Positions 42,794-64,000 of a stretch of 64,000 bases of DNA are shown in pieces. The translations under genes and the position numbers were made by a program. The notes below the pieces were generated by a model. It had not been told where the DNA came from, did no database searches, and saw only the letters and a list, made by a program, of their open reading frames with translations. Location: the IMG/VR virus record IMGVR_UViG_3300021963_000021, positions 62,001-126,000 of that record; one strand, written 5' to 3'. The first letter of the stretch is position 1; every line of letters starts with the position of its first letter.

Positions 42794-44047
42794 TTATCCA
42801 GCAGCGCCTGGAGCAGAAACCTTCTTCAGCATGTTCATGACCTTAGTTGTTGTCTGAGGATCAGCTTTTATCAATGCTGTGAACGCAGTTGCCAATGCCT
42901 GCTGTTGTTTCATAGATAGATTGCCACCGGTCATAACAGCTTTAACAGAAGTCTGTAGTAGACTTGGATCAACACCTGGTAACAGTTGAGCCATTTGTCT
43001 AGCATTTAGAGAACCTTCAACATCGCCACTGCCACCATCAGCTCCGCCGAGGCTTCCTGTGTTACCGCCAGCTGCCTGTGAAAAGCCCTGAGCAAATTTG
43101 CCCATCATGCCTTGTTTTGGTTTGTCTTGATCTAGACCCGGAGTTGTGCCTGAAGCACCTGTGTTGATGTTCTGACCTGCGCCTAGCTTGTAACTATCTT
43201 GTACAGCACGTAACAGTGCTTGGTCAATGATAGAACTTGGTAATACTTTTACATCGCCTTCTTCATCTAGTTCCATGTTTTCTAGATCTAGATTTTCAAA
43301 TGCTTTACCAAACTTGGCTTTAGCTGCTTTAAACCCACCACCTGTGGTTGCGCCTACGCCCTGTTTGGCTTTGAGTTTAGCTTTAAGATCAGCTTGTGGA
43401 TTTGCCGGCGCAGCAGCAGCTGGCTCAGCAGCAGTAGCGGCAGTTGAACCGCCAACACCTGCCAGTGATTTGATCCTTGCCAATGGATCAGTTGTTGTGC
43501 TTGGTACACCTGTTGGCACTGGATTTCCACTAGGATCAGTAACGCTGACATTGGCTTTGGGCGCAAATCCAGCAGGAGTATCTGCGGCTCCGCCGCCCGC
43601 GGCAGGAGTTTCTCCACCTGGTGGTACTTCGATATTACCAGTAGGTTCGATTTTTTGTTGAGCATCGCCACCGGCAGCAGCTTTTTTCTGTGCCATCCTG
43701 TCGCGGAATGCTGAAATGTTTGAAGAACCTTTGCCTAGAACTCCTGTTGGAGCACCAGCGTCATGACCTGCTATAATCTTTTCTACGCCCTGTGTAGGAT
43801 ATCCACTTTGTTGTAAGAACATCATCAACGCTTCGGAATTAGGTTGTTGTCCTGTTTTACCTAGGTACCTATTAAACTCTTTTCTAAGAGCAATAGCATC
43901 GTTACCAGCATCTAATACACCAGTTGATTTACTGTGTCCTAGCTTAGACGCTATTTTGCGTCCAGCACGACCAAATACTCCCATACCTGCGGGTGCTTCG
44001 TCAAGTTGTTGTAATTCAGATTCTGTTATAACGTCGTGGATTTTCAT
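42794..44047 (-). CDS. Low-complexity Ala/Gly-rich putative internal head (ejected) protein
   Basis: N-terminus MKIHDVITESELQQLDEA with I/L-x-E sites; internal RIKSLAGV resembles the scaffold C-terminus; TAAATA at 44073-44078. Confidence 0.55.
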   Translation of the reverse strand: MKIHDVITESELQQLDEAPAGMGVFGRAGRKIASKLGHSKSTGVLDAGNDAIALRKEFNRYLGKTGQQPNSEALMMFLQQSGYPTQGVEKIIAGHDAGAPTGVLGKGSSNISAFRDRMAQKKAAAGGDAQQKIEPTGNIEVPPGGETPAAGGGAADTPAGFAPKANVSVTDPSGNPVPTGVPSTTTDPLARIKSLAGVGGSTAATAAEPAAAAPANPQADLKAKLKAKQGVGATTGGGFKAAKAKFGKAFENLDLENMELDEEGDVKVLPSSIIDQALLRAVQDSYKLGAGQNINTGASGTTPGLDQDKPKQGMMGKFAQGFSQAAGGNTGSLGGADGGSGDVEGSLNARQMAQLLPGVDPSLLQTSVKAVMTGGNLSMKQQQALATAFTALIKADPQTTTKVMNMLKKVSAPGAAG

Positions 44048-44087
44048 TTGTCAATTCCTAAAAGCGATATCTTATTTATTCTTATAA

Positions 44088-44543
44088 GAGCGAGACAAGC
44101 TCGCTCGTGTTTTTCGCTTTCGCTCAAACACTTTTTTATTTCTTAATATTATTTAATCTTAGATGCGAAGCATTAAGTATTATCTAGATTGTTCAGTCAC
44201 ACTTAGCCCGTTGCCGGGCTAAAAAAACTGAGCATTATCTGAGTTGCACAGTCACACAGCAGTAGAGCATTACAGAGGCGGTTGTCCGGTACCTCGAGCT
44301 CCGTCTTATCACAACGGCGGTATACGCAAATCTGCTATCACTAGCGTATACGTAGGGTTTTTCTCCCTTCTTTTTGCCTATATTAACTCCGTTCAAACAG
44401 CAAAACCGCAGGCGAATTTGCGATCGTGGTCCTGTTAAGGATACTTGCTGAGCACTTTTAGCGGCGAAAAGATTTCCGTCCCTCTTGTTATCGAGTTGTC
44501 ACTGGGCGCACGATGTTAGCCTGCGCTAGCTAAAAATCCGCTT
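44088..44543 (-). ncRNA. Candidate large structured non-coding RNA (~460 nt) immediately 3' of the GIY-YIG gene
   Basis: Longest non-coding gap in the window; about ten hairpins; GNRA loops (GCAA, GAAA) on the minus strand; duplicated 24-nt module. Confidence 0.6.
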
Positions 44544-44978
44544 TTATTTTGCCTTTTTATGTTCTTCTAGACGCTGTCTAAGTATGTTTGAGCCGCCAAC
44601 TCTGACGTTTATAATGCCATTATAATAGTCATCTGTTTCTAAAACTCTGCGCTCGAACTGCTCTCTAGCTTCAAGATAGCTCATTTCTGCCTTGGATTTA
44701 CAAAGATAAAGTATTTCTCTAGTGAAGTTTTCCGGACCTAATGCTTGGACGTCTGCGTTTAACCTATCAGATGAGCCGAAATAGTCGCGCCAATCGCTTT
44801 CTACTACAGATCTTCTTTTAAGTTTTTTGCCTTTGAGTGGAGGTTTAGTACGTTTGAATTGTGCTAGTTTCTTGCCTATGTACTTTTGCCCGGATTTAAG
44901 ATTCGTGATGAGATAAACAAAGCCAATGTAGCCTTCGGGTATTTCTTCTACGGGTTGATTTTGATATGTCCAAAGCAC
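44544..44978 (-). CDS. Stand-alone GIY-YIG (Seg-like) nuclease, catalytic domain only
   Basis: GFVYLITN...KYIGKK, YFGSS, FTREIL, conserved E (YLEAREQ) and YYN; 144 aa; GTG start 5 nt after TAACTA. Confidence 0.85.
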   Translation of the reverse strand: MLWTYQNQPVEEIPEGYIGFVYLITNLKSGQKYIGKKLAQFKRTKPPLKGKKLKRRSVVESDWRDYFGSSDRLNADVQALGPENFTREILYLCKSKAEMSYLEAREQFERRVLETDDYYNGIINVRVGGSNILRQRLEEHKKAK

Positions 44979-45209
44979 TCACTTAGTTATTTTTGGTGGT
45001 CTGCCTAGTTTGCCTTTTCTGGCTGCTTTACGTTCTTGCCTTTTGTTTTGTATCTCTACTCGCCTTGTGCTTGCCTCATTGCGTATTTCTGAAAGCCAAT
45101 ATCGTGCCTTAATAGCTGCTTCGTCTGAGCCTCTGTATTCAAAGCGTTCCTGCCACTTAAAGTATTCTTGGAACGCTTTGATCATTCGATCGTGTGTTTC
45201 TGTGGTCAT
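44979..45209 (-). CDS. Small basic protein, Hc1/histone-H1-like with AT-hook-like tail
   Basis: F...G...AA.KAR..L.EI......RR.EI pattern; C-terminal RKGKLGRPPK. Confidence 0.5.
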   Translation of the reverse strand: MTTETHDRMIKAFQEYFKWQERFEYRGSDEAAIKARYWLSEIRNEASTRRVEIQNKRQERKAARKGKLGRPPKITK

Positions 45210-46984
45210 CCTACGATATCAATGTCATTACTGTAACTAGTAAAGCCATTTTCCTTGATAACTTTAAGAACTTGATTTACACGGCTGGTCAAATCATCTC
45301 TATGTGAAATCAAGAACACATTCTTATCACGCTCACGTGTCATTTTCTTAAGAACCGCAATAGAACTTTCAACACCGCTGGCATCCATGCCTGAATCAAC
45401 AAGCTCGTCGATAAACAACAGATTAATACTTTGGTATAGATTCTCCCAAACATCGCGGAATGCCCAGCTCATGCTTAGGATCAATCTATTGCGCTCACCT
45501 CTTGACAGATTATCAAAGTCTAGATCTTGTCCTAGCTGTGTGATTATCACAGTTAGATCGTTTTGGAACTCTACAGTATGTGGCAATCCGATGCGATCTA
45601 GATAGTAGGTTAATCTAGTATTGAGATAATTTAAGTTTTGATCAATAATACGTTTACGAACAAAACTGTCTTTACTGGTTAACAGCTTATGAAGGAACTC
45701 TTGGTGATCCTTAACACGGGTTAACTCATTGATTCTACCCCAATCAAGTTCCTGTACTGCTGTGTTTTTAAGTTCTTCTATCTGATCTTCGTAGGGATCA
45801 GCTTCAGCTATCTTGTTTGCCAGTTCTTTTTCAAGACCGCTAAGAGTATTCTTGTGATTATAAGCATCATCGATGCTGTCATAATGTACAACTGGCTGAT
45901 CTCCTACTTCGCCTAATAGGTCTAGTGCTTCTTTAAACGCAGTAATTTCGTCTTGATGCTCAGTAATACTTTCAGCGCAGTCACTGACCTGCTTGTTTTT
46001 AACAGTCAGCATCTCTTCGTGCTTGGTATCGTGTATGTCTTGACCGCAGCTATGGCACTTGTGTTCGGCCAATAGTGCTAGTTCTTTGTTAAGCTTCTCA
46101 AAGTTCTTTTGATCTTTATCTAACACAGCATTGCTCTTAGCGATTAATGCTAGAATGTTGTCTACTTCTTTCTTTTTCTTAGTCCATTCACTGAGATCTT
46201 TTTGTTTTGCGATCTCACTGTCAATATCAATAGTGCTTAGAACACGTATATTTTTTTCTAACTGTAGAATAACATCGCCTTTGGTAGATTGCCACAGGCG
46301 CTGTTTACGTTCTAGACTTTCGATGCTCTGTTGTACTTTTTCGTTTGATATCTTTACAGTTTCTAATCTAGTAGTTTCTGTTTGGATAAGATCTTTAGAA
46401 ATACGAATAGAATCTTTTAGCAGTTCTGCTTTTTCGCTTAGGATAGTTATACCTAGTAGCTGTTCTATGATAGCACGTTGATCGTTGGCTTTCATAGACA
46501 AAAACGGTTCAGTATACGTGTTTAGTGCCACAAGATGTTTAAACATTTCGTGACTCATACCAAACAGACGTTCTATTTCTTTTTGCGTTTCTCTGCTATC
46601 GCCCTGACTTTCGTCCTGATCGTCAGTTTCCATAGTTTCGCCGTTGACAGCAAACTTCAATAGGTTGGGCTTGCGTCCACGTTCGATATGATATTCTACA
46701 CCGTCCTTTTCAAAGGTCACGGTACACAGCATGCCTTTGCCGTTGATCTTGTTAACAAGATTATCTTTTTTGATGTTAGTTAACGCTGTGCCGTAGATAG
46801 CATAGCTCAACCCGTTAATGATAGTAGTTTTACCTGTGCCATTACGAGCTCCGCTGTCATCTCCGCCTAGATCTAGGTTTTCGCCTAGCACTAACGTTAG
46901 TTGCCCCTTGTCAAAGTCTATGGCTTGGGTCTGATTGCCCACACTCATAAAGTTTTTAACTGTTAGATTTTTAATTTTTATCAT
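45206..46984 (-). CDS. gp46: Recombination endonuclease ATPase subunit (gp46/SbcC/Rad50)
   Basis: KNFMSVG, Walker A NGTGKTT, zinc hook CHSC, signature LSRGE, Walker B LLFIDE, ISH. Confidence 0.95.
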   Translation of the reverse strand: MIKIKNLTVKNFMSVGNQTQAIDFDKGQLTLVLGENLDLGGDDSGARNGTGKTTIINGLSYAIYGTALTNIKKDNLVNKINGKGMLCTVTFEKDGVEYHIERGRKPNLLKFAVNGETMETDDQDESQGDSRETQKEIERLFGMSHEMFKHLVALNTYTEPFLSMKANDQRAIIEQLLGITILSEKAELLKDSIRISKDLIQTETTRLETVKISNEKVQQSIESLERKQRLWQSTKGDVILQLEKNIRVLSTIDIDSEIAKQKDLSEWTKKKKEVDNILALIAKSNAVLDKDQKNFEKLNKELALLAEHKCHSCGQDIHDTKHEEMLTVKNKQVSDCAESITEHQDEITAFKEALDLLGEVGDQPVVHYDSIDDAYNHKNTLSGLEKELANKIAEADPYEDQIEELKNTAVQELDWGRINELTRVKDHQEFLHKLLTSKDSFVRKRIIDQNLNYLNTRLTYYLDRIGLPHTVEFQNDLTVIITQLGQDLDFDNLSRGERNRLILSMSWAFRDVWENLYQSINLLFIDELVDSGMDASGVESSIAVLKKMTRERDKNVFLISHRDDLTSRVNQVLKVIKENGFTSYSNDIDIVG

Positions 46985-47994
46985 AGATGATTATAGATCT
47001 CCAACAATAGATTCTTGTCGTAGGTTTCTGAGTCAATAGATGTGATTTGATTGACTACGATAGTGTCAACACTTTCAAATTTAATATCTATAGGCTGTGC
47101 TGTAGTTGCGTCAATCTCTGCTTTCTCTGGGATTAACATCAATTCTCGCAGATTATACTGCGGCATAAATGTTTCTTTGATGAAGTTTGCTTCTTCAAAT
47201 GTAATGGGCAGGTCGATCGTAACACGACAATGCATCTTTTCACGTAACAATTGATCCGGCTTGTCGATGATTTGACTGAGTCTATAGGTTCTATAAACAG
47301 GCTGACCTGGCCATGTCTTGTATTCTGGAGTACCGCCCCATTCTAAAATCATCATACCTCGATCATCATCGCTGGCATCTGCGTAGTTGTGCGGAAACGC
47401 ATTACCGATATAGGTAATGTTGCCTTTGGTTTGGCGCTTATGGAAATGACCGCTGAACACATACTCTTGATTTACAAAGTGTTCTGATTGTAATTGTCCA
47501 TGATCGGGCATCTGTACCATTGCGTTCATATAGAACAACGGTAGTTCTAAGTGTGCGAACACATAGCGACTTTTAATCTTAGGTACAGTTTTCCACTCAT
47601 CACCTACTAGCCAAGGCATGATAGTAACATCGCCTTCTGTAAGCGTTTCTTTGATAGGAACCACGTTTGGAAACAGGCGCATAAACTCGACAGAGTTGAT
47701 TTCACGTTTGTCTTTATAGAACAAATCGTGATTGCCTAGTATAAAATATACTTTTTCAAAGCTCTGACTTAACCGTTCTAGATTTGAAACAGTATAGTTC
47801 ATAGTACTAACATCGGTGGTCGCACGATTATGATGCCAATCTCCTAGGAAAATGGCAGTTTCGCAACCTTCTGCTTTGGCTGTGTCACAGAACCAATTTA
47901 CAAAATCTTCACAGTCCTGATTGTGTGTTCGGCTTCCTGACTTAAGACCAAAGTGTATATCTGTAAAACACGCAACTTTTTTGAATAACGGCAT
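46981..47994 (-). CDS. gp47: Recombination endonuclease nuclease subunit (gp47/SbcD/Mre11)
   Basis: DIHFG, GDWHH, GNHD and SGHFH metallophosphoesterase motifs. Confidence 0.95.
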   Translation of the reverse strand: MPLFKKVACFTDIHFGLKSGSRTHNQDCEDFVNWFCDTAKAEGCETAIFLGDWHHNRATTDVSTMNYTVSNLERLSQSFEKVYFILGNHDLFYKDKREINSVEFMRLFPNVVPIKETLTEGDVTIMPWLVGDEWKTVPKIKSRYVFAHLELPLFYMNAMVQMPDHGQLQSEHFVNQEYVFSGHFHKRQTKGNITYIGNAFPHNYADASDDDRGMMILEWGGTPEYKTWPGQPVYRTYRLSQIIDKPDQLLREKMHCRVTIDLPITFEEANFIKETFMPQYNLRELMLIPEKAEIDATTAQPIDIKFESVDTIVVNQITSIDSETYDKNLLLEIYNHL

Positions 47995-54666: not shown

Positions 54667-57600
54667 ATGACCACAACGACTAGACAAAATAATTTAATAT
54701 TAGCAGAAGATTGGACTAGGATCTATCAGACTTTTAAGAATGCTGATTTCAAATCCTACGACTTTGAGAATCTTCGCCGTGTAATGATTGAGTATCTAAA
54801 GGAAAACTATCCTGAAGATTTCAACGATTATATTGAAAGTTCTGAGTATGTGGCTCTAATCGATCTGATAGCTTTCTTAGGTCAGAGTTTAGCTTTCCGC
54901 ATTGATCTTAACAGTCGCGAAAATTTTATAGAACTTGCTAGCAGAAAAGAATCTGTGCTAAGACTAGCACGTATGCTCAGCTACAATTCTAAAAGAAACA
55001 TTGCTGCGTCTGGACTTTTAAAATTTGATTCTGTTAGCACTACTGAAAATCTCTATGACAGTAACGGAATAAACCTAGCCAAGCAGACTATTCAATGGAA
55101 CGACCCTACAAACACTAATTGGTACGAGCAATTTATTGCGGTGTTAAATTCTGCTATGGTTCCATCAGTGGAGTTTGGAAAAAATCAAGGCGAAAACACA
55201 GTTGATGGAATAAACACAGAGCAGTACAGATTTAATTCTCTTACAACAGTAACTCCGGTATTTTCTATATCGAAAACAGTAGCTGCTAGGGGAATGAAGT
55301 TTGAAGTAGTTAGCACTTCTATCATTGGTTCGGAGGATATCTATGAAGAATCGCCGATACCTGGAAATCAACTAGGGTTTTTATACAGACAAGATGGTAA
55401 GGGAAATTCTAGTAATAATACAGGGTTTTTCTTGATGTTCAAGCAAGGCTCGTTAGAATCTGCTGAATTTACTATGACTCAGCCAACTACTAATGAAATC
55501 ATTGGTATTTCAACACTTAACATTAACAACGATGATTTTTGGTTGTACACATTAGATGGTAATTCTTCACCTTCTATTGAATGGAAAAAAGTTAGTTCGG
55601 TGTATGGTAACAATATCATATACAACAGTATTTCTAGCAACGACAGAAATGTCTACTCAGTGATAACAAAAGCCAACGATGCGGTTGATCTTTTATTCTC
55701 TGATGGAGTTTATGGAAATCTTCCTCAAGGTTCATTTAGAGCATATTACAGAGTTTCTAATGGTCTAGACTATACTATAAACCCTACAGAAATGAAAGGA
55801 GTAACCATTGAAATTCCTTATACAAATTCTGTAGGAGCACAGCATACTCTGTTTGTGACGTTGAGTTTGAATTATACAATTGATAATTCGTCTCCATCGG
55901 AAACTGTCGAATCAATAAGAGCAAAAGCACCGGCGCTGTATTATACACAGAATCGTATGATCACTGGAGAAGATTATAATCTTGCTCCGCTTGGCAGCAG
56001 TCAAGATATATTAAAAGTCAAAGCAGTGAATAGAACTTCTAGCGGAATTAGTCGCAACTTTGACATTGTGGATGCCAGTGGAAAATATTCTAAAGTAAAT
56101 GTTTTTGCTGACGACGGGTATGTCTACAGAACAGATAAAGAAAATGTCTTTACATTTAGATACACTAACAAAAATACAGTATTAAATTTTATTAGAAAAG
56201 TTGTTGAGCCAGCACTAGAAAGTTTTTCTACCTATAATTTTTACGTAACTAATTTTGACAAAATTGTCACGTCAGATGTTAACGTAAAGTGGTTACAGGC
56301 CACAAAGGATGTTAACGCTTCGACTGGATATTTTGGAAACTTCTTTGATAGCTTTCCTATTAAGGTAGGTAGCTCATACACTACCAGCAACTTAAAATAT
56401 GCCGAAGTTGGAGCACTAGTTAAATTTGTTACAGACCCTAATCTATCTCTAGCATTTAAGAATGGAGAGATAGTAGATTATGATCCTGCTGATCTAGAAC
56501 AAACACGATATATTTGGTCTAAGATAGTTAATATTGTTGGCGATGGTACTAATGCGGGTAAAGGAAATTTATCATCAGGTGTAGGACCAATTACATTCAG
56601 CGATGTTATTCCAACAGGATCTAGACCTTCTCAGGTAATTCCTAAATTTACTACAAATTTAAACTCTGACATTGAAGCAGAAATATTAAATCTAACATTT
56701 GCTTCTGAGACGTTTGGTCTAAGATACGACGTGTTATCTAGAGATTGGAAGATTGTAACATCTACAAATATTGATCTAAACAATGATTTCAGCTTGGGAC
56801 AAGCAGGAAGTACCACAAACAAGGCTCTTGATGCTTCGTGGATGATAGCATTTGTTTTTGACGGCACTGACTATGACGTAAGAGTCCGTATCACAGATTA
56901 TATTTTTAGCAGTGTAAGTCAAAATAGATTTTATTTTGACAGCAACGAAAAAATATACGACAGCAAAAATAGAACGGTGATCAAAGATCAAATAAAGATC
57001 TTAGGTATCAACACAACACCTGTAGGACGTGACAAGGGCTATATTGATGTAGCCAAAGAAATCATGGCACTAAAAGCTAGTAACATTGATTTTACTCTTG
57101 CGGATGTGCTTGATATTGTTGATCAGAAACAGGTACTCAAACAGGATATTCCTTTTGAAGTAGCAGACTCTGTTAGATTCGATGACGGATATCAAAGTTA
57201 TGAAAGTATTAAGGTAGCATTCTTTGACAGTGACGACGATGGTACTGTGGATAACCCTGATGCTTTTGACGAAGTTGTGGGCACAGATATCAATGACAAA
57301 TATTTGTTTTTTAGAAAAACAGTAGATGAATTTGGCTTCCAAAAATTAGAATATATCCCAAATGTCAACGGTAAAATTTTAATTAAAGACAAAGAAGTCA
57401 ACACCAGTGTTAACGATTATGATCATAATCAGTTGATATTCTTTTACGATCAGGAAGAAAATTTTATCAAGCGAGTTGACCTTGTAACAAGAACATTTAT
57501 ACTTGAGCCTAGCTATTCTGCCTTTATTGGTCGAGACAATCTCAAATTCCAATATATACACAATGCTAGTGCTGATAGAAGAATTGATCCTAGTGTAAGC

Positions 57601-58182
57601 AATATCATAGATGTGTATCTTTTAGAAAGACAATATGATATCAGTTACAGAAATTGGTTGTTGGGTTACAGCGCCACGGCTCCTGAAGTTCCAACACCAG
57701 AAGCATTAAGAATATCTTATGGGGCAGCATTGACAGAAATCAAAGCTATCAGCGATGAAATTGTATATCATCCTGTGAGATACTTTCCATTGTTTGGTGA
57801 CAGAGCACCTGTTGAATTCCAAGCAACATTTAAGGTTGTAAAAAATCCTTCAGAAACAATCAATGACAATGATCTCAAAGTCAAAATAATTAATTCCATT
57901 AATGAATTTTTTACCATAGACAATTGGGACTTTGGTGACAAATTTTATGCCAGCGAATTAATCACATACATCATAAAACAAAATGCTCCAGATATTAGTA
58001 ATATAGCATTGGTTCCGAAGCAACAAAATCAAGCGTATGGTAGCTTGATAGAAATCCAAGCAAGGCCGGATGAGATATTGGTTAGCGCAGCAACAGTTGA
58101 CAACATTTTGATATTATCAAACATCACAGCAGGTGAGTTAAATCTTTTAACTTCGCAGGTTGTTAGTAAAACAAGTGAATAA
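54667..58182 (+). CDS. gp6: Baseplate wedge protein, gp6-like (1171 aa)
   Basis: YDFE.LR, FNDYIESSE, ENF...A.R.ESVLRLA..L.Y, FSDGVYG.LP, TQNRMITGEDY motifs; TAAATA at 54645-54650. Confidence 0.85.
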   Translation: MTTTTRQNNLILAEDWTRIYQTFKNADFKSYDFENLRRVMIEYLKENYPEDFNDYIESSEYVALIDLIAFLGQSLAFRIDLNSRENFIELASRKESVLRLARMLSYNSKRNIAASGLLKFDSVSTTENLYDSNGINLAKQTIQWNDPTNTNWYEQFIAVLNSAMVPSVEFGKNQGENTVDGINTEQYRFNSLTTVTPVFSISKTVAARGMKFEVVSTSIIGSEDIYEESPIPGNQLGFLYRQDGKGNSSNNTGFFLMFKQGSLESAEFTMTQPTTNEIIGISTLNINNDDFWLYTLDGNSSPSIEWKKVSSVYGNNIIYNSISSNDRNVYSVITKANDAVDLLFSDGVYGNLPQGSFRAYYRVSNGLDYTINPTEMKGVTIEIPYTNSVGAQHTLFVTLSLNYTIDNSSPSETVESIRAKAPALYYTQNRMITGEDYNLAPLGSSQDILKVKAVNRTSSGISRNFDIVDASGKYSKVNVFADDGYVYRTDKENVFTFRYTNKNTVLNFIRKVVEPALESFSTYNFYVTNFDKIVTSDVNVKWLQATKDVNASTGYFGNFFDSFPIKVGSSYTTSNLKYAEVGALVKFVTDPNLSLAFKNGEIVDYDPADLEQTRYIWSKIVNIVGDGTNAGKGNLSSGVGPITFSDVIPTGSRPSQVIPKFTTNLNSDIEAEILNLTFASETFGLRYDVLSRDWKIVTSTNIDLNNDFSLGQAGSTTNKALDASWMIAFVFDGTDYDVRVRITDYIFSSVSQNRFYFDSNEKIYDSKNRTVIKDQIKILGINTTPVGRDKGYIDVAKEIMALKASNIDFTLADVLDIVDQKQVLKQDIPFEVADSVRFDDGYQSYESIKVAFFDSDDDGTVDNPDAFDEVVGTDINDKYLFFRKTVDEFGFQKLEYIPNVNGKILIKDKEVNTSVNDYDHNQLIFFYDQEENFIKRVDLVTRTFILEPSYSAFIGRDNLKFQYIHNASADRRIDPSVSNIIDVYLLERQYDISYRNWLLGYSATAPEVPTPEALRISYGAALTEIKAISDEIVYHPVRYFPLFGDRAPVEFQATFKVVKNPSETINDNDLKVKIINSINEFFTIDNWDFGDKFYASELITYIIKQNAPDISNIALVPKQQNQAYGSLIEIQARPDEILVSAATVDNILILSNITAGELNLLTSQVVSKTSE

Positions 58183-58184
58183 CA

Positions 58185-61100
58185 ATGGATAAAAAAGTTT
58201 TCAAACAAAGTGGATTACCAGTTAGAAAAACCGTAGATCTCTTACCAGAGATTTTTAAATCGCCTTCAAACGATAAATTTTTAGGTGCTACTTTAGATGC
58301 TTTGGTACAACCAGGATCACTGGAAAGATTAACTGGCTACATAGGACGAACCTATGGCAAGACATATAATTCTAAAGATGTTTATCTAGATATCACTCCG
58401 TCTTTAAGACATTCCTATCAACTTGAACCTGGCGTAACTGTTGATAAAAATAATAGAACTAATAGATTCTATGATTATATTGATTTTAAAAATCAACAAA
58501 AATATTTTGGCAGTAAACAAGAAAGAGATGATTTAGTCACAGGTCAAGAACACTACACTTGGAATCCTCCTATCGATTGGGATAAGTTTGTTAACTATCG
58601 AGAATACTATTGGTTGCCTCAAGGTCCTGATGCTGTACAAGTTCTGGGACAAGGCCAAGAAGTTGTAAGTTCTTACAGAGTTAGATCAGATGGCCAAAAC
58701 GAATGGCTGTTTATTCCGGACGGGTTATCAAGAAATCCTAACATTATATTATATAGAGGACAAACCTACGAGTTCAATGTAAATGCTCCTGGGGATCCTT
58801 TTTATATTAGAACAAGCAATGTATTAGGTGGTCAGTCAGACTTTAATAGAGGTGTGACTAACAATGGTGCTGAAGTTGGAAAAATTATTTTTACAGTGCC
58901 AAACGATGCTCCAGACCTGCTCTATTATCAAAGCTCAAATAACATTAATAGAGTCGGCACTTTTAGAATTTTTAATGTCACTGACAACACATACCTTGAT
59001 GTTGAAAAAGAAATTCTAGGCAAAGACAAATATACCAGCACCAACGGTGTTGTGTTTTCTAATGGTCTAAAGGTAGAATTTACTGGAAAAACAACTCCTG
59101 AAAAATATGCTAACGGCTATTGGATAGTTGAGGGTGTTGGCACAGATATTAGGCTAGTTAAATTCTCTGATCTAGAATTGCCGCCGATTTCTAATCCAAA
59201 TCAAATAATTGTTTTTGACGACGGCGGGTTTGACGAACAACCTTTTGATGATGCTACATCATATCCTTCGACTAAGGACTACATAACCATTAATAGATCA
59301 AGTAAAGATAAAAATCCTTGGTCTAGATATAATCGTTGGTTCCACAGATCTGTAGTTGAGTATGCTGCTCAGTTAAATGACAGTGTTGCTCAGGTATCAG
59401 AGAGTAATCGAGCAAAGAGACCTATTATTGAATTTTCGTCTGGACTCCAGATGTTTAATCATGGTACAGTTGCCAAAGATTCTGTTGATCTAATAGATGA
59501 CTTTACAACAGATGTATTTTCAAATATCGAAGGAACTGCGGGTTACAATATTGACGGTATTGATCTTGCTGACGGTATGCGTGTGTTGTTTACTGCTGAC
59601 ACAGATTCTTTAGTAAAAAATAAAATATATGTGGTCAATTTTATTACAGTACAAACTAGCACAAACGTCACGAATAGAAAACAAATAAGTTTAGTTGAAG
59701 CAGAGGATTCTAACACACAACCTGGCGAAGGTCTAATAGTTAGACTAGGTAAAACCAATGCTGGCCGCATGTACCACTTTGATGGGTCTGACTGGAATAA
59801 GAGTCAAACAAAAACAGCCATCAACCAATCACCTCTATTTGATGTTTATGACAGCGATGGAATTTCTTTATCAGATAGTTCTAAGTATGGAACATCTAGC
59901 TTTGAAGGAACAAAAATAGTCAACTATAAAGTTGGCACAGGTGTAGTTGACAGTGAATTAGGGTTCCCTATCAGTTATTTGAATATCGAAAACTCTGGAG
60001 ATATCGTATTTGAGGTGTCTTGGGAAACTGATAAATTTGTTAGCCGAATTGGTACAACGTCGACTTCTTACGAAATTGCCGCAAACTTTTATAGAGTAAA
60101 CAAAAGTCTTTCGGACTATTCATATGGCAACGGCTGGGCACTGTTTGACAACGAATACTATCAGCCTATCGTACAGGTAAAAACTATATCTGAATCTACA
60201 GATAGAATTGTTTTTGAAACCTGTTTCTGGAAAACAGCAACTAGAGAAGAAATCTTTTTTTACCTTAATGGTAAAAAAATAAACGATGCGTGGACTTCTG
60301 AAATTAATACAACACGAACTTTTGTTTTTAATAAAACTTTCGCTGTTGGTGATGTGTTAACAATTAAGGTATACACAGACGCAGAACCAGATCAAGGATT
60401 CTACGAGTTTCCAGTTGGTTTAGAAAAAAATCCTTTGAACCAAGATGTAAAAGAATTTTCTCTAGGTCAAGTTAATGATCATCTTGGTTCTATGGTTGAG
60501 CTGTCAAAAGAATTTAACGGTATATTTCCTGGTTCAAGTAATTTGCGAGATATCTCGGACTATAGAAATTACGGTAGAAGATTTTTTAAACATTCGGGAA
60601 TATCGAGCATAGCATTACCGATGCTATGTGACAAGACATTTAACATTGTTAAGGCATTGAGATTTGCCTCTTACGAATACGAAAAATTTAAAAATACTTT
60701 GTTAATCAAAGTTTTAGATCTCCCGTATGACGATGGTAGTGTTGTGGATCTCATAGAAGCTGCTATTTCTAAATTAACTTCTGTTAAAACCAAAAATGCT
60801 CCGTTCGCTAATTCGGACATGATTGGTAGTGGAGCATTTAAATCTATAAAGTACACAGTAGAAGATGAAGGTATTACTACATTTGCTCTATCATCTAAGT
60901 TTGATTTAACAGTTCCATCTGACAAAGCGGTCTATGTTTATATCAATGATAATCAACTTTTACACGAAGTAGACTACGAGTTTGACTCGACTTTTGGTTT
61001 TATAAAAATTAAAAAACCGTTAGTTGAAGATGACGTAATTGAGATACGTGAGTACTATTCGACGTCATTTAACTTTATTCCTCAAACACCAACAAAGTTG

Positions 61101-64000
61101 GGACTGGCTAAAAAATATGTTCCTAGAATCTACATAGACGACACCTATGTCACTCCTACGAAAGTGATACAAGGCCATGACGGTAGTATCACTGTAGCCT
61201 ATGATGATTATAGAGATGATGTTCTTTTAGAACTTGAAAAAAGAATTTACAATAATATTAAAGAAGAATACAATCCTCAGATTTTAGATACGGATAAAAT
61301 CTATGGAGGGTATTATAGAAATTCTGTCTTTACAAAGAAAGATCTTGATAGTATTTTAGCTTCAGAGTTTTTAAAATGGTCTGCTGGTTTAACCAAAGAC
61401 ATATATGTCAACGACTACTTTGACCAAGACAATCCTTTCACATATACATATTCAAGAGCATCAGACGTAACAAGAACAGAGCAGCTACCTAAGCATTGGA
61501 GAGGTATTTACAAATACATCTACGAAACCGACAGACCCCATATCTGTCCTTGGGAAATGTTAGGCTTCAGCGAAAAACCTCTATGGTGGGAAGATGAATA
61601 CGGTCCTGCTCCTTACACCAGCGGAAATCTGTTGTTATGGGAAGATCTAAGAGATGGGGTTATACGAAAAGGTGCCAGCGCAGGCACACATCCAAGATAT
61701 GCTAGGCCCAACCTCTTACAGATAATACCAGTTGATGAAAATGGCCAACTAAAAGATCCTACAACTATTGGATGTATTGTTGACTATTCTAATAATAAAA
61801 TATCTGAAAGTTTTACATTTGGTGATATAGCACCTGTAGAAAACGCATGGAGGAAAAGCAGTTCTTATCCGTTTGCTGTACTAATCGCCCTTTGCGTACA
61901 ACGTCCAATGGAAGTAATTTCTACAAACTTTGATAGAAACAAAGTTAAAAGAAATATTATTAATCAATTAGTATCTACAGATACAAACCAGTTTATTGAT
62001 CTAGAAACGATTAAATCGTCAGTGGTTGACGGGTATACACCTGTTGGCCTATTCAGTTATGTTTTAGATTACATTAGATCTAATGCTGTTAACACAGAAT
62101 CATTATATGATTTCTTTAGTAACTATAATGTTAAGTTGTCTAGTCGCATTGGCGGGTTTGTTGATAAATCACAACAGAAATATCTATTAGACAGCAAGAG
62201 TCCGCAGAGTAAAACATCTGGAGTGTTTATTCCTCAAGAAGATTACGAGATATTTTTTAATGTAAGTTCACCATCTTCCGTGGTAACATATTCTGGTGTT
62301 ATCATAGAAAAAGTTCCTACAGGATTTAAACTATCAGGGTATGATAAGCTAGATGCTAGTTTTGTATATTATGATTATTTTGCCAGATTAGATGACCCTG
62401 CGATATCCGTTGGAGGCGTCAGCGAAAACTACTCTGATTGGACTACTGAAAAATTTTATAGCAAAGGGGCACTTGTAAAATACAATTCTAAATTTTACAG
62501 AGTCTCTCAAACACATACTAGTGGTCAAACATTTGACAGTAATCAATTTGTTGAAATTTCTACACTTCCACTTGTAGGCGCTGTTACAGCAGTTAAGAGA
62601 ACTTCTTTTGACAAGCAGACTGTGTTAACAACGCCCTATGGAACTGTTATTGAAAATATACAAGGGGTAGTCGATTTCTTGTTAGGCTATCAAGCATACA
62701 TGAAAGATCAAGGACTTGTATTTGATGATTATAATACAGATCTACAAGTTTCAAACGATTGGGAAACCAGTTGTAAAGAATTCATGTTCTGGACAACCCA
62801 TAACTGGGCCACTGGTGCTATCATATCGTTGAGCCCTGCTGCTCTAAAGATAAAAATAACAGCAGTTGGTAGCGTAGCAGATAACATATTAGATACATTC
62901 TACGACTACTCCATATTCAAAGCCGACGGAACAAAGTTATCTCCAGATGAAGTTGATGTATATAGAACCTATAATGAAATTATACTAGCACCTAGTAGTG
63001 TGACTACTGGTATCTATTATGCTAAGATTAGTTTTGTCTTAAAAGAACATGTGGTACTATTCAACGACAGAACTATATTCAATGATGTTATCTATGACAA
63101 AGGTCCTGGTTATAGACAGGAAAGAATTAAAGTTCTAGGTTTTAGAACCAGCGACTGGGACGGTGATTATACAAGTCCGGGATTTATCTATGATGTTGCT
63201 GATATTAATCCTTGGGAAAAATATACTGATTACAGACTAGGCGACATTGTACAATTTAAACAATTTAATTACGTCAGCAAGTATTTCCAGAAAGGTACTG
63301 CTGAGTTTGATAGGGCTGGATGGGAAAAACTTGATTCAGAACCGACGTCTGGTTTAGTAGCAAACTTTGATTATAAAATTAATCAAATTGAAGATTTCTA
63401 CGAAGTTGATTATCAAGGTATCAATAACGAGCAAAAAGTAATGGCTCGACATTCTATTGGTTATCAGAAACGAGAATTTTTACAAGACATGGCAGAAGAT
63501 GAAGTCAGTCAGTTTAGACTTTATCAAGGCTACATCAAAGAAAAAGGCACATACAACGCCATAACTAAGGTGTTTGATAAACTTAGTAGAATCCCCGAAG
63601 ACTCTGTAGAGCTTAAAGAAGAGTGGGCATTCTTGTTAGGAAGCATGGGCGGCACAGAGCAGTATAATGAAATAGAATTTTCTTTGAAACAAAATGCTCT
63701 TAAATTAAATCCTCAACCAGTGCTTTTAAATGAAAGAAACACATCAAAATCTGAATATCAAAATTATATTATTGTAAAGCAGAACGATTATACTGTAGGC
63801 AATAACTCTTATAAATTCCCAGTCAAGGATTATCCTGTAGGCAATTGGACTGCTGGATATGTTTACGCAGATGATGTTGATTATGTAGTTTCTTCATTCG
63901 CAGACATTTATCTACAAGATGTGACCACCTATAAAAACGGTCAAACAACTTGGGTGACATTTACAGATACTGGGTGGAATGTTTTAAGATATAGAATCAG
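58185..64000 (+). CDS. Giant baseplate wedge protein, gp7-like (>1930 aa, truncated by window end)
   Basis: Absent from the ORF track, consistent with no stop in the window. ATG at 58185 just after the gp6 stop: MDKKVFKQSGLPVRKTVDLLPEIF...YQLEPG...IDWDKFVNYREYYWLPQGP. Confidence 0.75.
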   Translation, partial: MDKKVFKQSGLPVRKTVDLLPEIFKSPSNDKFLGATLDALVQPGSLERLTGYIGRTYGKTYNSKDVYLDITPSLRHSYQLEPGVTVDKNNRTNRFYDYIDFKNQQKYFGSKQERDDLVTGQEHYTWNPPIDWDKFVNYREYYWLPQGPDAVQVLGQGQEVVSSYRVRSDGQNEWLFIPDGLSRNPNIILYRGQTYEFNVNAPGDPFYIRTSNVLGGQSDFNRGVTNNGAEVGKIIFTVPNDAPDLLYYQSSNNINRVGTFRIFNVTDNTYLDVEKEILGKDKYTSTNGVVFSNGLKVEFTGKTTPEKYANGYWIVEGVGTDIRLVKFSDLELPPISNPNQIIVFDDGGFDEQPFDDATSYPSTKDYITINRSSKDKNPWSRYNRWFHRSVVEYAAQLNDSVAQVSESNRAKRPIIEFSSGLQMFNHGTVAKDSVDLIDDFTTDVFSNIEGTAGYNIDGIDLADGMRVLFTADTDSLVKNKIYVVNFITVQTSTNVTNRKQISLVEAEDSNTQPGEGLIVRLGKTNAGRMYHFDGSDWNKSQTKTAINQSPLFDVYDSDGISLSDSSKYGTSSFEGTKIVNYKVGTGVVDSELGFPISYLNIENSGDIVFEVSWETDKFVSRIGTTSTSYEIAANFYRVNKSLSDYSYGNGWALFDNEYYQPIVQVKTISESTDRIVFETCFWKTATREEIFFYLNGKKINDAWTSEINTTRTFVFNKTFAVGDVLTIKVYTDAEPDQGFYEFPVGLEKNPLNQDVKEFSLGQVNDHLGSMVELSKEFNGIFPGSSNLRDISDYRNYGRRFFKHSGISSIALPMLCDKTFNIVKALRFASYEYEKFKNTLLIKVLDLPYDDGSVVDLIEAAISKLTSVKTKNAPFANSDMIGSGAFKSIKYTVEDEGITTFALSSKFDLTVPSDKAVYVYINDNQLLHEVDYEFDSTFGFIKIKKPLVEDDVIEIREYYSTSFNFIPQTPTKLGLAKKYVPRIYIDDTYVTPTKVIQGHDGSITVAYDDYRDDVLLELEKRIYNNIKEEYNPQILDTDKIYGGYYRNSVFTKKDLDSILASEFLKWSAGLTKDIYVNDYFDQDNPFTYTYSRASDVTRTEQLPKHWRGIYKYIYETDRPHICPWEMLGFSEKPLWWEDEYGPAPYTSGNLLLWEDLRDGVIRKGASAGTHPRYARPNLLQIIPVDENGQLKDPTTIGCIVDYSNNKISESFTFGDIAPVENAWRKSSSYPFAVLIALCVQRPMEVISTNFDRNKVKRNIINQLVSTDTNQFIDLETIKSSVVDGYTPVGLFSYVLDYIRSNAVNTESLYDFFSNYNVKLSSRIGGFVDKSQQKYLLDSKSPQSKTSGVFIPQEDYEIFFNVSSPSSVVTYSGVIIEKVPTGFKLSGYDKLDASFVYYDYFARLDDPAISVGGVSENYSDWTTEKFYSKGALVKYNSKFYRVSQTHTSGQTFDSNQFVEISTLPLVGAVTAVKRTSFDKQTVLTTPYGTVIENIQGVVDFLLGYQAYMKDQGLVFDDYNTDLQVSNDWETSCKEFMFWTTHNWATGAIISLSPAALKIKITAVGSVADNILDTFYDYSIFKADGTKLSPDEVDVYRTYNEIILAPSSVTTGIYYAKISFVLKEHVVLFNDRTIFNDVIYDKGPGYRQERIKVLGFRTSDWDGDYTSPGFIYDVADINPWEKYTDYRLGDIVQFKQFNYVSKYFQKGTAEFDRAGWEKLDSEPTSGLVANFDYKINQIEDFYEVDYQGINNEQKVMARHSIGYQKREFLQDMAEDEVSQFRLYQGYIKEKGTYNAITKVFDKLSRIPEDSVELKEEWAFLLGSMGGTEQYNEIEFSLKQNALKLNPQPVLLNERNTSKSEYQNYIIVKQNDYTVGNNSYKFPVKDYPVGNWTAGYVYADDVDYVVSSFADIYLQDVTTYKNGQTTWVTFTDTGWNVLRYRI

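What the first reader, a model, noticed from the sequence alone, without database searches (positions are those of the whole stretch)
44088..44978. Minimal GIY-YIG nuclease followed by a ~460-nt highly structured RNA: candidate nuclease-RNA system
Seen: in an otherwise gene-dense window, the only ~500-nt gap starts at the stop codon of a 144-aa GIY-YIG gene and is packed with helices. These include GCGCA/TGCGC (44506-44526), a multibranch domain closed by CAGCAA/TTGCTG (44398-44450), GTATACGC/GCGTATAC (44320-44351), TTAGCCCG-GCAA-CGGGCTAA (44203-44222) and GAGCGAG/CTCGCTC (44088-44106). GNRA tetraloops read correctly on the nuclease strand. Established: homing GIY-YIG enzymes (I-TevI, Seg) use an appended DNA-binding domain; this protein has none, only a basic insert (KRTKPPLKGKKLKRR). 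Compact nucleases paired with a cis-encoded RNA are known (IscB/HEARO, TnpB), but I know of none for GIY-YIG. Inference: ORF and RNA are one late transcript (TAACTA 5 nt before the GTG), and the RNA may scaffold, regulate or guide the nuclease.
Basis: partly seen in the sequence, partly recalled or inferred. Interest (0 to 1): 0.85.

Follow-up and report, generated by a model that had tools for sequence, protein, structure and literature searches.

The report
Known phage RNA, longer than described
The gap after the small nuclease gene encodes a real, about 455-base folded RNA whose first third is the known but unexplained Rfam family Polynucleobacter-1; the RNA also occurs without this nuclease, so a dedicated nuclease-RNA machine is not supported.

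Summary
Window 44088-44543 (minus strand) encodes a conserved structured RNA directly after a 144-aa GIY-YIG gene. Its first 137 nt match Rfam RF01718, Polynucleobacter-1 (80.6 bits, threshold 37).

The next ~300 nt are not in the Rfam model. They hold two covariation-supported pseudoknots, GNRA and UUCG hairpins and a terminator. They also hold two 7-nt elements that stay identical to each other through ten sequence variants.

The gene-RNA adjacency was already noted in a 2010 supplement: the PSSM2_218-like upstream family named there is this GIY-YIG family (43% identity).

The pairing is synteny within one T4-like freshwater phage lineage, not an obligate system:
- In 5 viral loci the upstream slot holds an unrelated PD-(D/E)XK nuclease.
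- In 6 loci another gene lies between the nuclease and the RNA.
- In one locus the RNA follows an amidoligase gene.
- In at least 7 Burkholderiales chromosomes it stands alone, beside a phage-family gene and small integrases.
- P-SSM2 and phage Melnitz carry the nuclease family without the RNA.

Verdict: an autonomous non-coding RNA of phages and integrative elements, function unknown. It is a new member of a known family with an undescribed 3' half. The twin 7-mers are the most intriguing lead.

The parts
44544..44978 (-). 144-aa GIY-YIG nuclease gene (phrog_447 / PSSM2_218 family). It has a nuclease domain only, with a basic beta-hairpin insert.
   Evidence: Pfam PF19835, E 7e-37. phrog_447, E 9e-40. 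AF2 model pLDDT 94.1. Best PDB fold match is the I-TevI catalytic domain. Invariant G19 Y22 Y33 G35 R87 E103 N120. 43% identical to PSSM2_218.
44395..44531 (-). 5' domain of the RNA, equal to Rfam RF01718 Polynucleobacter-1. It comprises the P1 hairpin, a conserved GGGAYGGAAA junction and a multi-stem junction.
   Evidence: cmscan 80.6 bits against a threshold of 37, E 1.7e-15, full model 1-141. The same hit begins 10-13 nt after the stop codon in 18 of 20 related loci.
44354..44368 (-). Hairpin H1 (AGGG / CCCU, A-rich loop).
   Evidence: All 4 pairs show compensatory changes; 91% of cells pair.
44320..44351 (-). Hairpin H2 (GUAUACGC / GCGUAUAC). Its loop bases 44332-44338 (AUAGCAG) pair with 44256-44262 (CUGCUGU), forming pseudoknot 1.
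   Evidence: H2: 8 of 8 pairs covary. Pseudoknot 1: 97.7% paired and all 7 pairs covary.
44264..44315 (-). Invariant core with pseudoknot 2. H3 is 44311-44315 / 44281-44285 (GUUGU/ACAAC). It crosses H5 (44298-44302 / 44264-44268) and H4 (44291-44295 / 44275-44279). The GGUACCGG...ACCGCC sequence is almost invariant.
   Evidence: H3 100% paired with 3 pairs covarying. H5 has 5 of 5 pairs covarying. H4 99.7% paired. Invariant columns.
44234..44246 (-). Repeat 1, CAAC-UC-AGAUAAU. The variable 7-mer is at 44234-44240.
   Evidence: The 7-mer is identical to that of repeat 2 in 68 of 70 aligned RNAs across ten variants; shuffles give a mean of 15.9 and a maximum of 28. The three best-sampled variable positions match in 106 of 106 sequences.
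44203..44222 (-). Hairpin H6, UUAGCCCG-GCAA-CGGGCUAA (GNRA loop), between the two repeats.
   Evidence: 95% of cells pair and 3 pairs covary.
44179..44191 (-). Repeat 2, CAAU-CU-AGAUAAU. The variable 7-mer is at 44179-44185.
   Evidence: No complementary partner was found in the RNA, within about 3-4 kb in cis, or enriched in the window.
44163..44173 (-). UUCG-tetraloop hairpin (AUGC-UUCG-GCAU).
   Evidence: 3 pairs with compensatory changes, 93.8% paired. Variants such as GCGC-UUCG-GCGC are seen.
44107..44131 (-). Hairpin GUGUUUGAGCGAAAGCGAAAAACAC (GAAA loop).
   Evidence: Conserved GAGCG-AAG-CGA core with a varying outer stem. The same element is present in the bacterial copy L209.
44088..44106 (-). 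Terminal hairpin GAGCGAG-CUUGU-CUCGCUC, the likely intrinsic terminator and 3' end of the RNA.
   Evidence: 5 of 7 pairs covary. In most relatives it is followed by a U run. In this window the tail is only UU-A-UAAG.
44073..44080 (-). AATAAATA box (T4-late-promoter-like) in front of the next gene (42794-44047, 417 aa, no family). This marks the end of the RNA unit.
   Evidence: The ATAAATA / CTAAATA box is conserved in nearly all 47 aligned loci, 25-45 nt before the ATG. Reading it as a late promoter is an inference from the T4 consensus TATAAATA.
44979..47994 (-). Upstream operon context: gp47-like (46981-47994), gp46-like (45206-46984) and a 76-aa ORF (44979-45209). The 76-aa ORF's stop codon abuts the GIY-YIG start.
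   Evidence: Pfam Metallophos and AAA_23/SMC_N. The same gene order is seen in the related viral loci that extend far enough.

Best explanation
The gap encodes an autonomous, highly structured non-coding RNA of about 455 nt. Its first third is the known family Polynucleobacter-1 (RF01718). The rest is a conserved 3' extension: a double-pseudoknot core, two identical 7-nt elements flanking a GNRA hairpin, a UUCG hairpin and a two-hairpin terminator.

In this T4-like phage the RNA is made as the tail of the gp47-gp46-p76-GIY-YIG transcript. It ends at its own terminator, before the late promoter of the next gene (inferred from spacing and motifs).

The GIY-YIG gene is the usual occupant of a nuclease slot after gp46, not a dedicated partner of the RNA. 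Their adjacency is lineage synteny.

Proposed action (inferred, weakly supported): the RNA works in trans as a rigid scaffold. It presents two identical short single-stranded elements to two copies of one partner. That partner could be a nucleic acid read by base pairing or a symmetric protein, and it changes quickly between related elements.
For: RNA identity:
- RF01718 at 80.6 bits.
- Recurrent in 18 of 20 related loci.
- Gap length conserved at 456-518 nt.

Structure of the extension:
- 91.3% of cells pair, against 37-50% in slid controls.
- 35 of 46 pairs show compensatory changes, and 0 of 500 shuffles reach the observed values.
- Both pseudoknots are supported.

Autonomy from the GIY-YIG gene:
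- A PD-(D/E)XK nuclease replaces GIY-YIG in L127, L196, L106, L118 and L155.
- An extra ORF lies between GIY-YIG and the RNA in six loci.
- An amidoligase gene lies upstream in L172.
- Of 20 bacterial pattern hits, 16 carry the 5' domain by nhmmer, and RF01718 was confirmed in all 7 that were scanned.
- In those bacterial loci tblastn finds no GIY-YIG. The neighbours are a divergent DUF6641 gene and small tyrosine recombinases.
- The bacterial copy L209 keeps the full architecture, including the 3' hairpins.
- The protein family is present in 599 cultured-phage records, while blastn finds the RNA in none. P-SSM2 has no gap after its copy. Melnitz gives no hit.

Co-transcription:
- The RNA starts 10-30 nt after the stop codon of whichever ORF precedes it.
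- No promoter-like site lies on the minus strand between ORF and RNA.

Twin 7-mers:
- Identical in 68 of 70 RNAs across ten variants.
- For each variable position, the best mutual-information partner is the same position in the other repeat.
- The flanks stay distinct (CUC against UCU), which argues against simple gene conversion.
- In the Polynucleobacter chromosome both repeats read AGCGAAAG.
Against: - No transcript data exist, so the ends, any processing and the abundance are all inferred.
- No partner for the 7-mers was found in the RNA, in flanking DNA or in the window.
- Nearly all viral examples come from one syntenic lineage. There a small nuclease gene lies within about 1 kb upstream in 82 of 85 informative loci, and two unrelated nuclease folds occupy that slot. 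A functional link to 'a nuclease' in that lineage therefore cannot be excluded.
- The bacterial neighbours (DUF6641, a 124-aa acidic ORF) are uncharacterised and could be functional analogues.
- In this window the terminator has a weak U tail.
Confidence: 0.6

Rival explanations
1. Nuclease-RNA partnership. The small nucleases lack a DNA-binding domain and use the RNA as scaffold, regulator or guide. The twin 7-mers would set the specificity. GIY-YIG and PD-(D/E)XK would be interchangeable effectors.
For: - A nuclease gene lies within about 1 kb upstream in 82 of 85 informative viral RNA loci.
- Two unrelated nuclease folds occupy the same slot.
- The GIY-YIG protein has a nuclease domain only.
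- The RNA starts 10-13 nt after the stop codon.
- The 7-mers vary in a guide-like way.
Against: - All these loci share one synteny, so they amount to roughly one evolutionary observation.
- The RNA occurs with no nuclease upstream in L172 and in the bacterial loci.
- Genes can be inserted between nuclease and RNA.
- The nuclease family is common without the RNA.
- Nearly identical GIY-YIG proteins (97-98%) go with different 7-mers.
- No target complementary to the 7-mers was found.
Confidence: 0.13
2. Homing-endonuclease parking. The GIY-YIG (and PD-(D/E)XK) genes are free-standing homing endonuclease genes that sit next to a highly conserved RNA gene and use it or its surroundings as a homing target. 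The precedent, from background knowledge, is T4 segB in the tRNA cluster.
For: - Best Pfam match is SegE, with a weak PADLOC homing-endonuclease hit and an I-TevI-like fold.
- GIY-YIG identity is discordant with the backbone. L018 is 88% against 59% for gp46, while L105 is 58% against 74%.
- The ORF is the most conserved DNA of the region, 0.83-0.91 against 0.55-0.77 for the flanks.
- Alternative nuclease families occupy one slot.
Against: - No empty site (p76 followed directly by the RNA) was seen among 85 informative loci.
- The protein has no DNA-binding domain.
- The family is present once per record in all 599 matching records, 407 of them cyanophages, which looks like a fixed gene rather than a sporadic one.
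- The PD-(D/E)XK alternative matches a family annotated as a Holliday-junction resolvase. That fits a recombination-nuclease slot next to gp46/gp47.
Confidence: 0.15
3. Cis-regulatory leader. The RNA is a very long attenuator or riboswitch-like element that controls read-through into the gene downstream (Weinberg 2010 scored the motif as possibly cis-regulatory).
For: - In phage and bacterial copies alike, the RNA is followed on the same strand by a gene, with two hairpins just before it.
- The 2010 table marks the motif 'cis-reg: y'.
Against: - The downstream genes are unrelated (417-aa protein against 124-aa acidic ORF).
- A conserved late-promoter-like box lies between the terminator and the gene, so the gene has its own start.
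- About 450 nt with two pseudoknots is far larger than known leaders.
- The 3' module recurs with a different 5' domain in L032 and L061.
Confidence: 0.08

Closest known systems
Rfam RF01718, Polynucleobacter-1 RNA motif (Weinberg et al. 2010, PMC2864571)
   Same: The 5' 137 nt match the full model at 80.6 bits. The upstream gene family is the same (PSSM2_218-like). The Polynucleobacter / Burkholderiales association is the same. Function is unknown in both.
   Different: The Rfam model covers only 141 positions. Here the unit is about 455 nt, with a conserved 3' half that was only partly sketched as 'tail' and 'tailpknot' in the 2010 raw alignment. The 2010 paper found no copy in any sequenced phage; here the RNA sits in T4-like viral contigs, and the upstream gene is identified as a GIY-YIG nuclease.
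OMEGA systems: IscB with HEARO RNA, TnpB with omega RNA
   Same: A compact nuclease gene lies directly beside a large structured RNA on the same strand. The RNA carries short variable elements.
   Different: The nuclease is GIY-YIG or PD-(D/E)XK, not RuvC/HNH. No Rfam HEARO match at E <= 1. No transposon ends were looked for in the flanks. The RNA occurs without any such nuclease. The variable elements are internal twin 7-mers, not a terminal guide, and no target is known.
T4 segB homing endonuclease in the tRNA / stable-RNA gene cluster (background knowledge, not tested here)
   Same: A GIY-YIG gene lies next to structured RNA genes in a T4-like phage.
   Different: Seg proteins carry a C-terminal DNA-binding domain and are sporadic. 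This 144-aa protein has none, and the slot is always filled. The RNA is not a tRNA.
Large ornate phage-associated RNAs of unknown function (GOLLD, ROOL)
   Same: Several hundred nucleotides long, with many helices and pseudoknots. Carried by phages and prophage-like elements. Function unknown.
   Different: No covariance-model match to either. The size here is smaller (about 455 nt). The twin co-varying 7-mers and the swappable 5' domain are not features recalled for those RNAs (from memory, not checked here).
I-TevI catalytic domain (PDB 1mk0, 1ln0)
   Same: Best structural match for the protein: probability 0.96, TM 0.67 on the target. The GIY / YIG / Arg / Glu / Asn-type positions are invariant.
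   Different: No linker or DNA-binding domain, no intron context, and an extra basic beta-hairpin insert. Sequence identity is 18%.

Membership tests
Rfam RF01718 Polynucleobacter-1 | Covariance-model score at or above the curated gathering score (37 bits) over the full model | tested here: met
   80.6 bits, model positions 1-141 of 141, E 1.7e-15; E 2.2e-17 on the region alone.
Rfam RF01718 Polynucleobacter-1 | Family helices kept by compensatory changes in relatives | tested here: met
   P1 has 4 of 5 pairs covarying. The hairpin at alignment columns 136-140/160-164 also shows two-sided changes.
Rfam RF01718 Polynucleobacter-1 | Usual context: downstream of GOS11034 / PSSM2_218-like genes; present in Polynucleobacter | tested here: met
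   The window protein is 43% identical to PSSM2_218, E 1e-25. RF01718 hits were found in Polynucleobacter and other Burkholderiales genomes.
RNA-guided nuclease systems (IscB/TnpB-type OMEGA) | RuvC-type (with or without HNH) nuclease encoded beside its RNA | tested here: not met
   The protein is GIY-YIG only.
RNA-guided nuclease systems (IscB/TnpB-type OMEGA) | RNA and nuclease co-occur obligately | tested here: not met
   RNA without the nuclease: L172 and the bacterial loci. Nuclease without the RNA: P-SSM2, Melnitz and, by blastn, the cultured phages.
RNA-guided nuclease systems (IscB/TnpB-type OMEGA) | A variable guide segment that matches a target | tested here: inconclusive
   Twin 7-mers vary in concert, but no complementary or identical target was found nearby. 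Whole genomes were not available.
Free-standing GIY-YIG homing endonuclease (Seg type) | GIY-YIG catalytic domain with conserved catalytic residues | tested here: met
   PF19835, E 7e-37. Invariant Y22, Y33, R87, E103 and N120. I-TevI-like fold.
Free-standing GIY-YIG homing endonuclease (Seg type) | Appended DNA-binding domain | tested here: not met
   144 aa in total. Pfam covers residues 3-123. The model shows one domain plus a beta-hairpin and a C-terminal helix.
Free-standing GIY-YIG homing endonuclease (Seg type) | Sporadic presence, with empty sites in relatives | tested here: inconclusive
   No empty site among 85 informative loci. However, alleles are discordant with the backbone, and a PD-(D/E)XK gene can take the slot.
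Free-standing GIY-YIG homing endonuclease (Seg type) | Cuts the cognate site of genomes that lack the gene | not testable with these tools
   This needs an enzyme assay or mixed infection.
Group I intron carrying a GIY-YIG ORF | Group I core (P3-P9) and flanking exons of one host gene | tested here: not met
   No group I match at E <= 1. The ORF abuts a complete upstream ORF, and the RNA ends at a terminator before a separate gene.
tRNA / tmRNA | Detected by ARAGORN or by the Rfam tRNA / tmRNA models | tested here: not met
   ARAGORN finds 0 genes in the window. There are no Rfam hits other than RF01718.

The most novel reading that the evidence does not exclude
The extended Polynucleobacter-1 RNA is a programmable, bivalent recognition RNA of mobile elements. 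Its two identical, fast-changing 7-nt elements, held on a rigid double-pseudoknot scaffold, would read two copies of one short sequence. This would direct or restrain the DNA enzymes encoded beside it: GIY-YIG or PD-(D/E)XK nucleases in phages, small tyrosine recombinases in bacterial islands. That would be a new kind of RNA-directed system, with a swappable 5' domain.
Probability: 0.08. Interest if true: 0.85.

Novelty: new member of a known kind. Interest (0 to 1): 0.45.

Why it matters
Polynucleobacter-1 has sat in Rfam since 2010 as a 141-nt motif with no function and no known phage carrier. This window and its relatives change that picture in five ways.
- The motif is only the first third of a roughly 455-nt RNA with two pseudoknots.
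- The RNA is carried by a family of T4-like viral contigs with many members in IMG/VR, and by integrative elements in Burkholderiales chromosomes.
- The upstream gene family noted in 2010 is a GIY-YIG nuclease.
- The RNA contains two short elements kept identical to each other through at least ten sequence variants. That signature points to a shared, rapidly changing partner.
- Cultured Polynucleobacter strains carry the RNA, so the question can be tested at the bench.

The result also guards against over-reading gene-RNA adjacency as an RNA-guided nuclease.

Tried and rejected
- **Other known RNA families.** The permissive Rfam scan of the gap (E <= 1) returned only RF01718. It gave no group I or II intron, HEARO, ROOL, GOLLD, RNase P or tmRNA hit. 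ARAGORN found no tRNA or tmRNA in the window.
- **Coding potential of the gap.** The sense-strand longest ORF has a median of 40 aa across 107 relatives. Antisense ORFs of 60 aa or more occur in only 43 of 107, with scattered starts and ends. The alignments show 1-2-nt indels, and frequent G-U pairs fit only the sense strand. Coding was rejected.
- **T4 endonuclease II as the protein's closest relative.** There was no PDB sequence hit. The fold search returned I-TevI, and no endonuclease II entry was among the 50 matches shown.
- **A partner for the twin 7-mers.** Mutual information across the whole RNA, reverse complements within about 3-4 kb, same-sense copies nearby and counts in the 64-kb window all came back negative.
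- **Self-complementarity, local mini-hairpins, K-turn or box C/D-like readings, and mini-ORFs ending in UAA/UGA.** I examined these by eye. They are not consistent across variants, and the bacterial AGCGAAAG type breaks the stop-codon pattern.
- **A sigma-70 promoter between ORF and RNA.** None lies on the minus strand.
- **Relationship between the genes downstream of the RNA in phage and bacterium.** None was found, and the Atlas search of the 417-aa protein was uninformative.
- **Literature.** A search for DUF6641, PF24608 and PF19835 returned nothing.
- **Cultured phages.** blastn with the whole gap and with the invariant core found no real match.
- **Technical dead ends.** My first MAFFT run timed out.
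Full report
**What is at the coordinates**

The minus strand of the window carries, in order:
- a gp47-like gene (46981-47994)
- a gp46-like gene (45206-46984)
- a 76-aa ORF (44979-45209)
- a 144-aa ORF (44544-44978)
- 496 nt without a convincing ORF
- a 417-aa gene (42794-44047)

A T4 baseplate gene lies on the other strand. The window is therefore part of a T4-like phage. The closest cultured relative of the 144-aa protein is in Methylophilales phage Melnitz (Kyanoviridae), at 64% identity.

The 144-aa protein is a GIY-YIG nuclease:
- It matches PF19835 at E 7e-37 over residues 3-123.
- It matches phrog_447 at E 9e-40; that family carries the misnomer 'NAD synthetase'.
- It has no second domain. 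The AlphaFold model has pLDDT 94.1.
- Its best fold match is the I-TevI catalytic domain.
- G19, Y22, Y33, G35, R87, E103 and N120 are invariant in 51 relatives.

The gap is the only long non-coding stretch in the window. The ORF-poor region from 58185 to the window end is one giant ORF that runs off the end.

**The RNA is partly a known family**

An Rfam scan of the whole window gives a single hit above threshold. It is RF01718, Polynucleobacter-1, at 44395-44531 on the minus strand, with 80.6 bits against a gathering score of 37. A permissive scan of the gap adds nothing else.

Weinberg et al. 2010 (PMC2864571) described this motif from fresh-water and estuary metagenomes and from Polynucleobacter sp. 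QLW-P1DMWA-1. Their supplement says three relevant things:
- Most copies lie downstream of genes of family GOS11034, 'with possible homology to PSSM2_218 in cyanophage P-SSM2'.
- The 3' half is not always detected.
- No copy was found in any sequenced purified phage.

I fetched PSSM2_218. It is 43% identical to the window protein, E 1e-25.

**The RNA is much longer than the Rfam model**

The GIY-YIG protein has at least 596 relatives in viral contigs. The best 80 (84-99% identical), wherever the contig reaches, share the order gp46 - p76 - GIY-YIG - gap - next gene. The gap is 456-518 nt long in them. RF01718 starts 10-13 nt after the stop codon in 18 of 20 loci scanned.

The nucleotide-identity profile runs as follows:

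| Region | Identity to window |
|---|---|
| Upstream genes | 0.55-0.77 |
| GIY-YIG ORF | 0.83-0.91 |
| RF01718 part | 0.39-0.58 |
| 44130-44380 | 0.69-0.76 |
| Downstream gene | 0.2-0.35 |

In the RF01718 part, the first two helices change mostly by paired substitutions.

Alignment of 47 gaps shows helices along the whole length. I then tested an explicit model on 70 RNAs that included distant loci. It holds these elements:
- hairpins H1 and H2
- a pseudoknot between the H2 loop (AUAGCAG) and CUGCUGU 70 nt downstream
- a second pseudoknot in which GUUGU/ACAAC crosses a long interrupted stem (GGAGC..GAGGU / GCCUC..GCUCU) around the almost invariant GGUACCGG-ACAAC-CGCC
- a GCAA hairpin
- a UUCG hairpin

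The test results were:
- 91.3% of cells pair, against 37-50% when partners are slid by 1-3 columns.
- 35 of 46 pairs show two-sided changes.
- The covariation score is 0.423, against at most 0.097 for the slid controls.
- None of 500 shuffles reaches the observed values.

Two further hairpins follow. The last is terminator-like and covaries. Then comes a conserved ATAAATA box and the next gene.

The single-sequence fold energy alone is unremarkable (z = -2.08). The gap is not coding on either strand. Weinberg's raw alignment carries 'tail' and 'tailpknot' annotations, so part of this extension was glimpsed in 2010. It is not in the Rfam model.

**Is the RNA tied to the GIY-YIG gene?**

I searched from the RNA side with the invariant core pattern. 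That gave 120 viral loci, of which 90 carry the RNA by nhmmer; one of the 90 dropped out of the stricter classification run. The 89 classified fall into these classes:

| Upstream context | Loci |
|---|---|
| GIY-YIG gene directly upstream (46-93% identical) | 71 |
| GIY-YIG, then a 257-356-aa ORF, then the RNA | 6 |
| PF24608 PD-(D/E)XK nuclease (168-188 aa) in the same slot after gp46 | 5 |
| Other upstream context | 3 |
| Too little upstream DNA to tell | 4 |

The PD-(D/E)XK protein is an unrelated fold, and its PHROG family is annotated as a Holliday-junction resolvase. In one of those five loci, L106, an RNase H gene also lies between the nuclease and the RNA. Among the 'other' loci, L172 is a viral contig with a permuted tmRNA and a tRNA, and its RNA follows an amidoligase gene.

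I also ran a pattern taken from the flank of the Polynucleobacter entry in the 2010 alignment against bacterial genomes. It found 20 loci. Sixteen carry the 5' domain by nhmmer, in Polynucleobacter, Burkholderiaceae and Oxalobacteraceae chromosomes. RF01718 was confirmed in all seven that I scanned. In these bacterial loci:
- tblastn finds no GIY-YIG match.
- The upstream neighbour is a divergently oriented DUF6641 gene, a phage protein family.
- Downstream in five loci lies a 188-aa ORF; in the two tested it is a tyrosine recombinase. Other integrases or transposases lie nearby.
- The copy in L209 keeps the whole architecture, including the 3' hairpins.

Conversely, the GIY-YIG family occurs once per record in 599 cultured-phage records, 407 of them cyanophages. 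blastn finds the RNA in none of the 50,697 records. P-SSM2 has no gap after its copy, and Melnitz gives no hit.

The adjacency is therefore real and strong, but it is confined to one syntenic lineage. The constant element is the RNA. The gene in front of it varies.

**What the nuclease slot may be**

GIY-YIG identity is discordant with the backbone. L018 is 88% identical in GIY-YIG but 59% in gp46. L105 is 58% in GIY-YIG but 74% in gp46 and 87% in p76. Alleles are therefore exchanged between backbones, and an unrelated nuclease can take the slot.

That pattern fits a mobile homing-endonuclease gene. It equally fits a recombination-nuclease position next to gp46/gp47 that has undergone non-orthologous replacement. 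Three points favour the second reading:
- No empty site was seen.
- The protein has no DNA-binding domain.
- The family is single-copy in every matching record, and most of those records are cyanophages.

I could not decide between the two.

**The unexplained feature**

Two direct repeats flank the GCAA hairpin: CAAC-UC-[7-mer] at 44246-44234 and CAAU-CU-[7-mer] at 44191-44179.
- The two 7-mers are identical to each other in 68 of 70 aligned RNAs. One of the two exceptions is an alignment slip.
- Ten different 7-mers are seen: AGAUAAU, GGAUAAU, GCAUAAU, ACAUAAU, GGAUGAU, AGAUGAU, GAAUGAU, GGAUGAA, AGAUGAA and AGUUGAA.
- Shuffling gives a mean of 15.9 identical pairs and a maximum of 28.
- In the Polynucleobacter chromosome both repeats read AGCGAAAG.
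- For each variable position, the best mutual-information partner in the whole RNA is the same position of the other repeat. The three best-sampled positions agree in 106 of 106 sequences.
- The immediate flanks stay different (CUC against UCU), so simple homogenisation is unlikely.
- No complementary or identical partner was found inside the RNA, within about 3-4 kb, or enriched in the window.
- Loci with 97-98% identical GIY-YIG proteins carry different 7-mers, so the nuclease does not set them.

The simplest reading is that both elements meet two copies of one rapidly changing partner. This is an inference.

The RNA is also modular. In L032 and L061 the RF01718 domain and the core are replaced by a small ORF plus about 330 nt of unrelated non-coding sequence with no Rfam match. 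The same 3' repeat module and terminators follow.

**Verdict**

The interpretation as a GIY-YIG-RNA system is only partly supported. Co-transcription in this lineage is plausible, but the RNA is a member of a known family, the adjacency was already noted, and the RNA is autonomous of this nuclease.

What is new:
- the full extent and pseudoknotted fold of the RNA
- its placement in T4-like phages and in bacterial integrative elements
- the identity of the upstream gene
- the twin co-varying 7-mers

Function remains unknown. My best-supported model is a trans-acting scaffold RNA with two identical recognition elements.

Noticed in passing
window 58185-64000: One uninterrupted + strand reading frame of at least 1938 codons runs off the window end, directly after a 1171-aa ORF (54667-58182). 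It is a giant gene, possibly a fibre or structural protein. I did not characterise it.
   Followed up: partly
L032 3723-4050 and L061 about 3684-4000: About 330 nt of non-coding sequence replace the RF01718 domain and core, ahead of the same 3' repeat module. There is no Rfam match at E <= 0.1, and the stretch contains a repeated UUAGCAUACGG. It may be a second, undescribed 5' RNA domain.
   Followed up: partly
L172 3911-4304 and 5169-5240: A viral contig carrying a permuted (two-piece type) tmRNA gene and a tRNA gene, about 4 kb upstream of its Polynucleobacter-1 RNA.
   Followed up: no
L209 5715-6281; same-length ORFs in L203, L213, L214, L221: Unusually small 188-aa ORFs lie about 0.7 kb downstream of the bacterial RNA copies. 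The two tested (L209, L221) are tyrosine recombinases with a catalytic domain only. In L209 a 124-aa acidic ORF lies in between. Their size recalls FimB/FimE-type invertases (from memory, untested).
   Followed up: partly
L209 4513-4522 and the flanks in Weinberg's alignment: A CTAAATAA box, resembling a T4-type late promoter, is conserved upstream of the bacterial RNA copies, and TATAAAT lies before the ORF that follows. This may hint that the island responds to a T4-like phage's late transcription. That is pure speculation.
   Followed up: no
window 42794-44047: The 417-aa protein after the RNA is rich in Ala, Gly and Pro and matches no Pfam or PHROG family. Where tblastn detects it in relatives, only about the first 90-200 residues match.
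   Followed up: partly
L222 26712-27149 (P-SSM2 PSSM2_218) and many RefSeq phage records: The phrog_447 GIY-YIG family is widely annotated as 'NAD synthetase'. This appears to be a propagated misannotation.
   Followed up: partly
L032 2216-2767: A 2OG-Fe(II) oxygenase gene is inserted between gp46 and p76 in L032. Similar extra spacing between gp46 and p76 in L025-L028 and L056-L060 suggests the same, but I did not check. This shows further mosaicism of the locus.
   Followed up: no
window 44088-44106, + strand: The terminator scan calls this hairpin a + strand terminator (tail GTGTTTTTCG). No + strand gene ends nearby. The stem belongs to the minus-strand RNA, and the + strand call is probably incidental.
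   Followed up: yes
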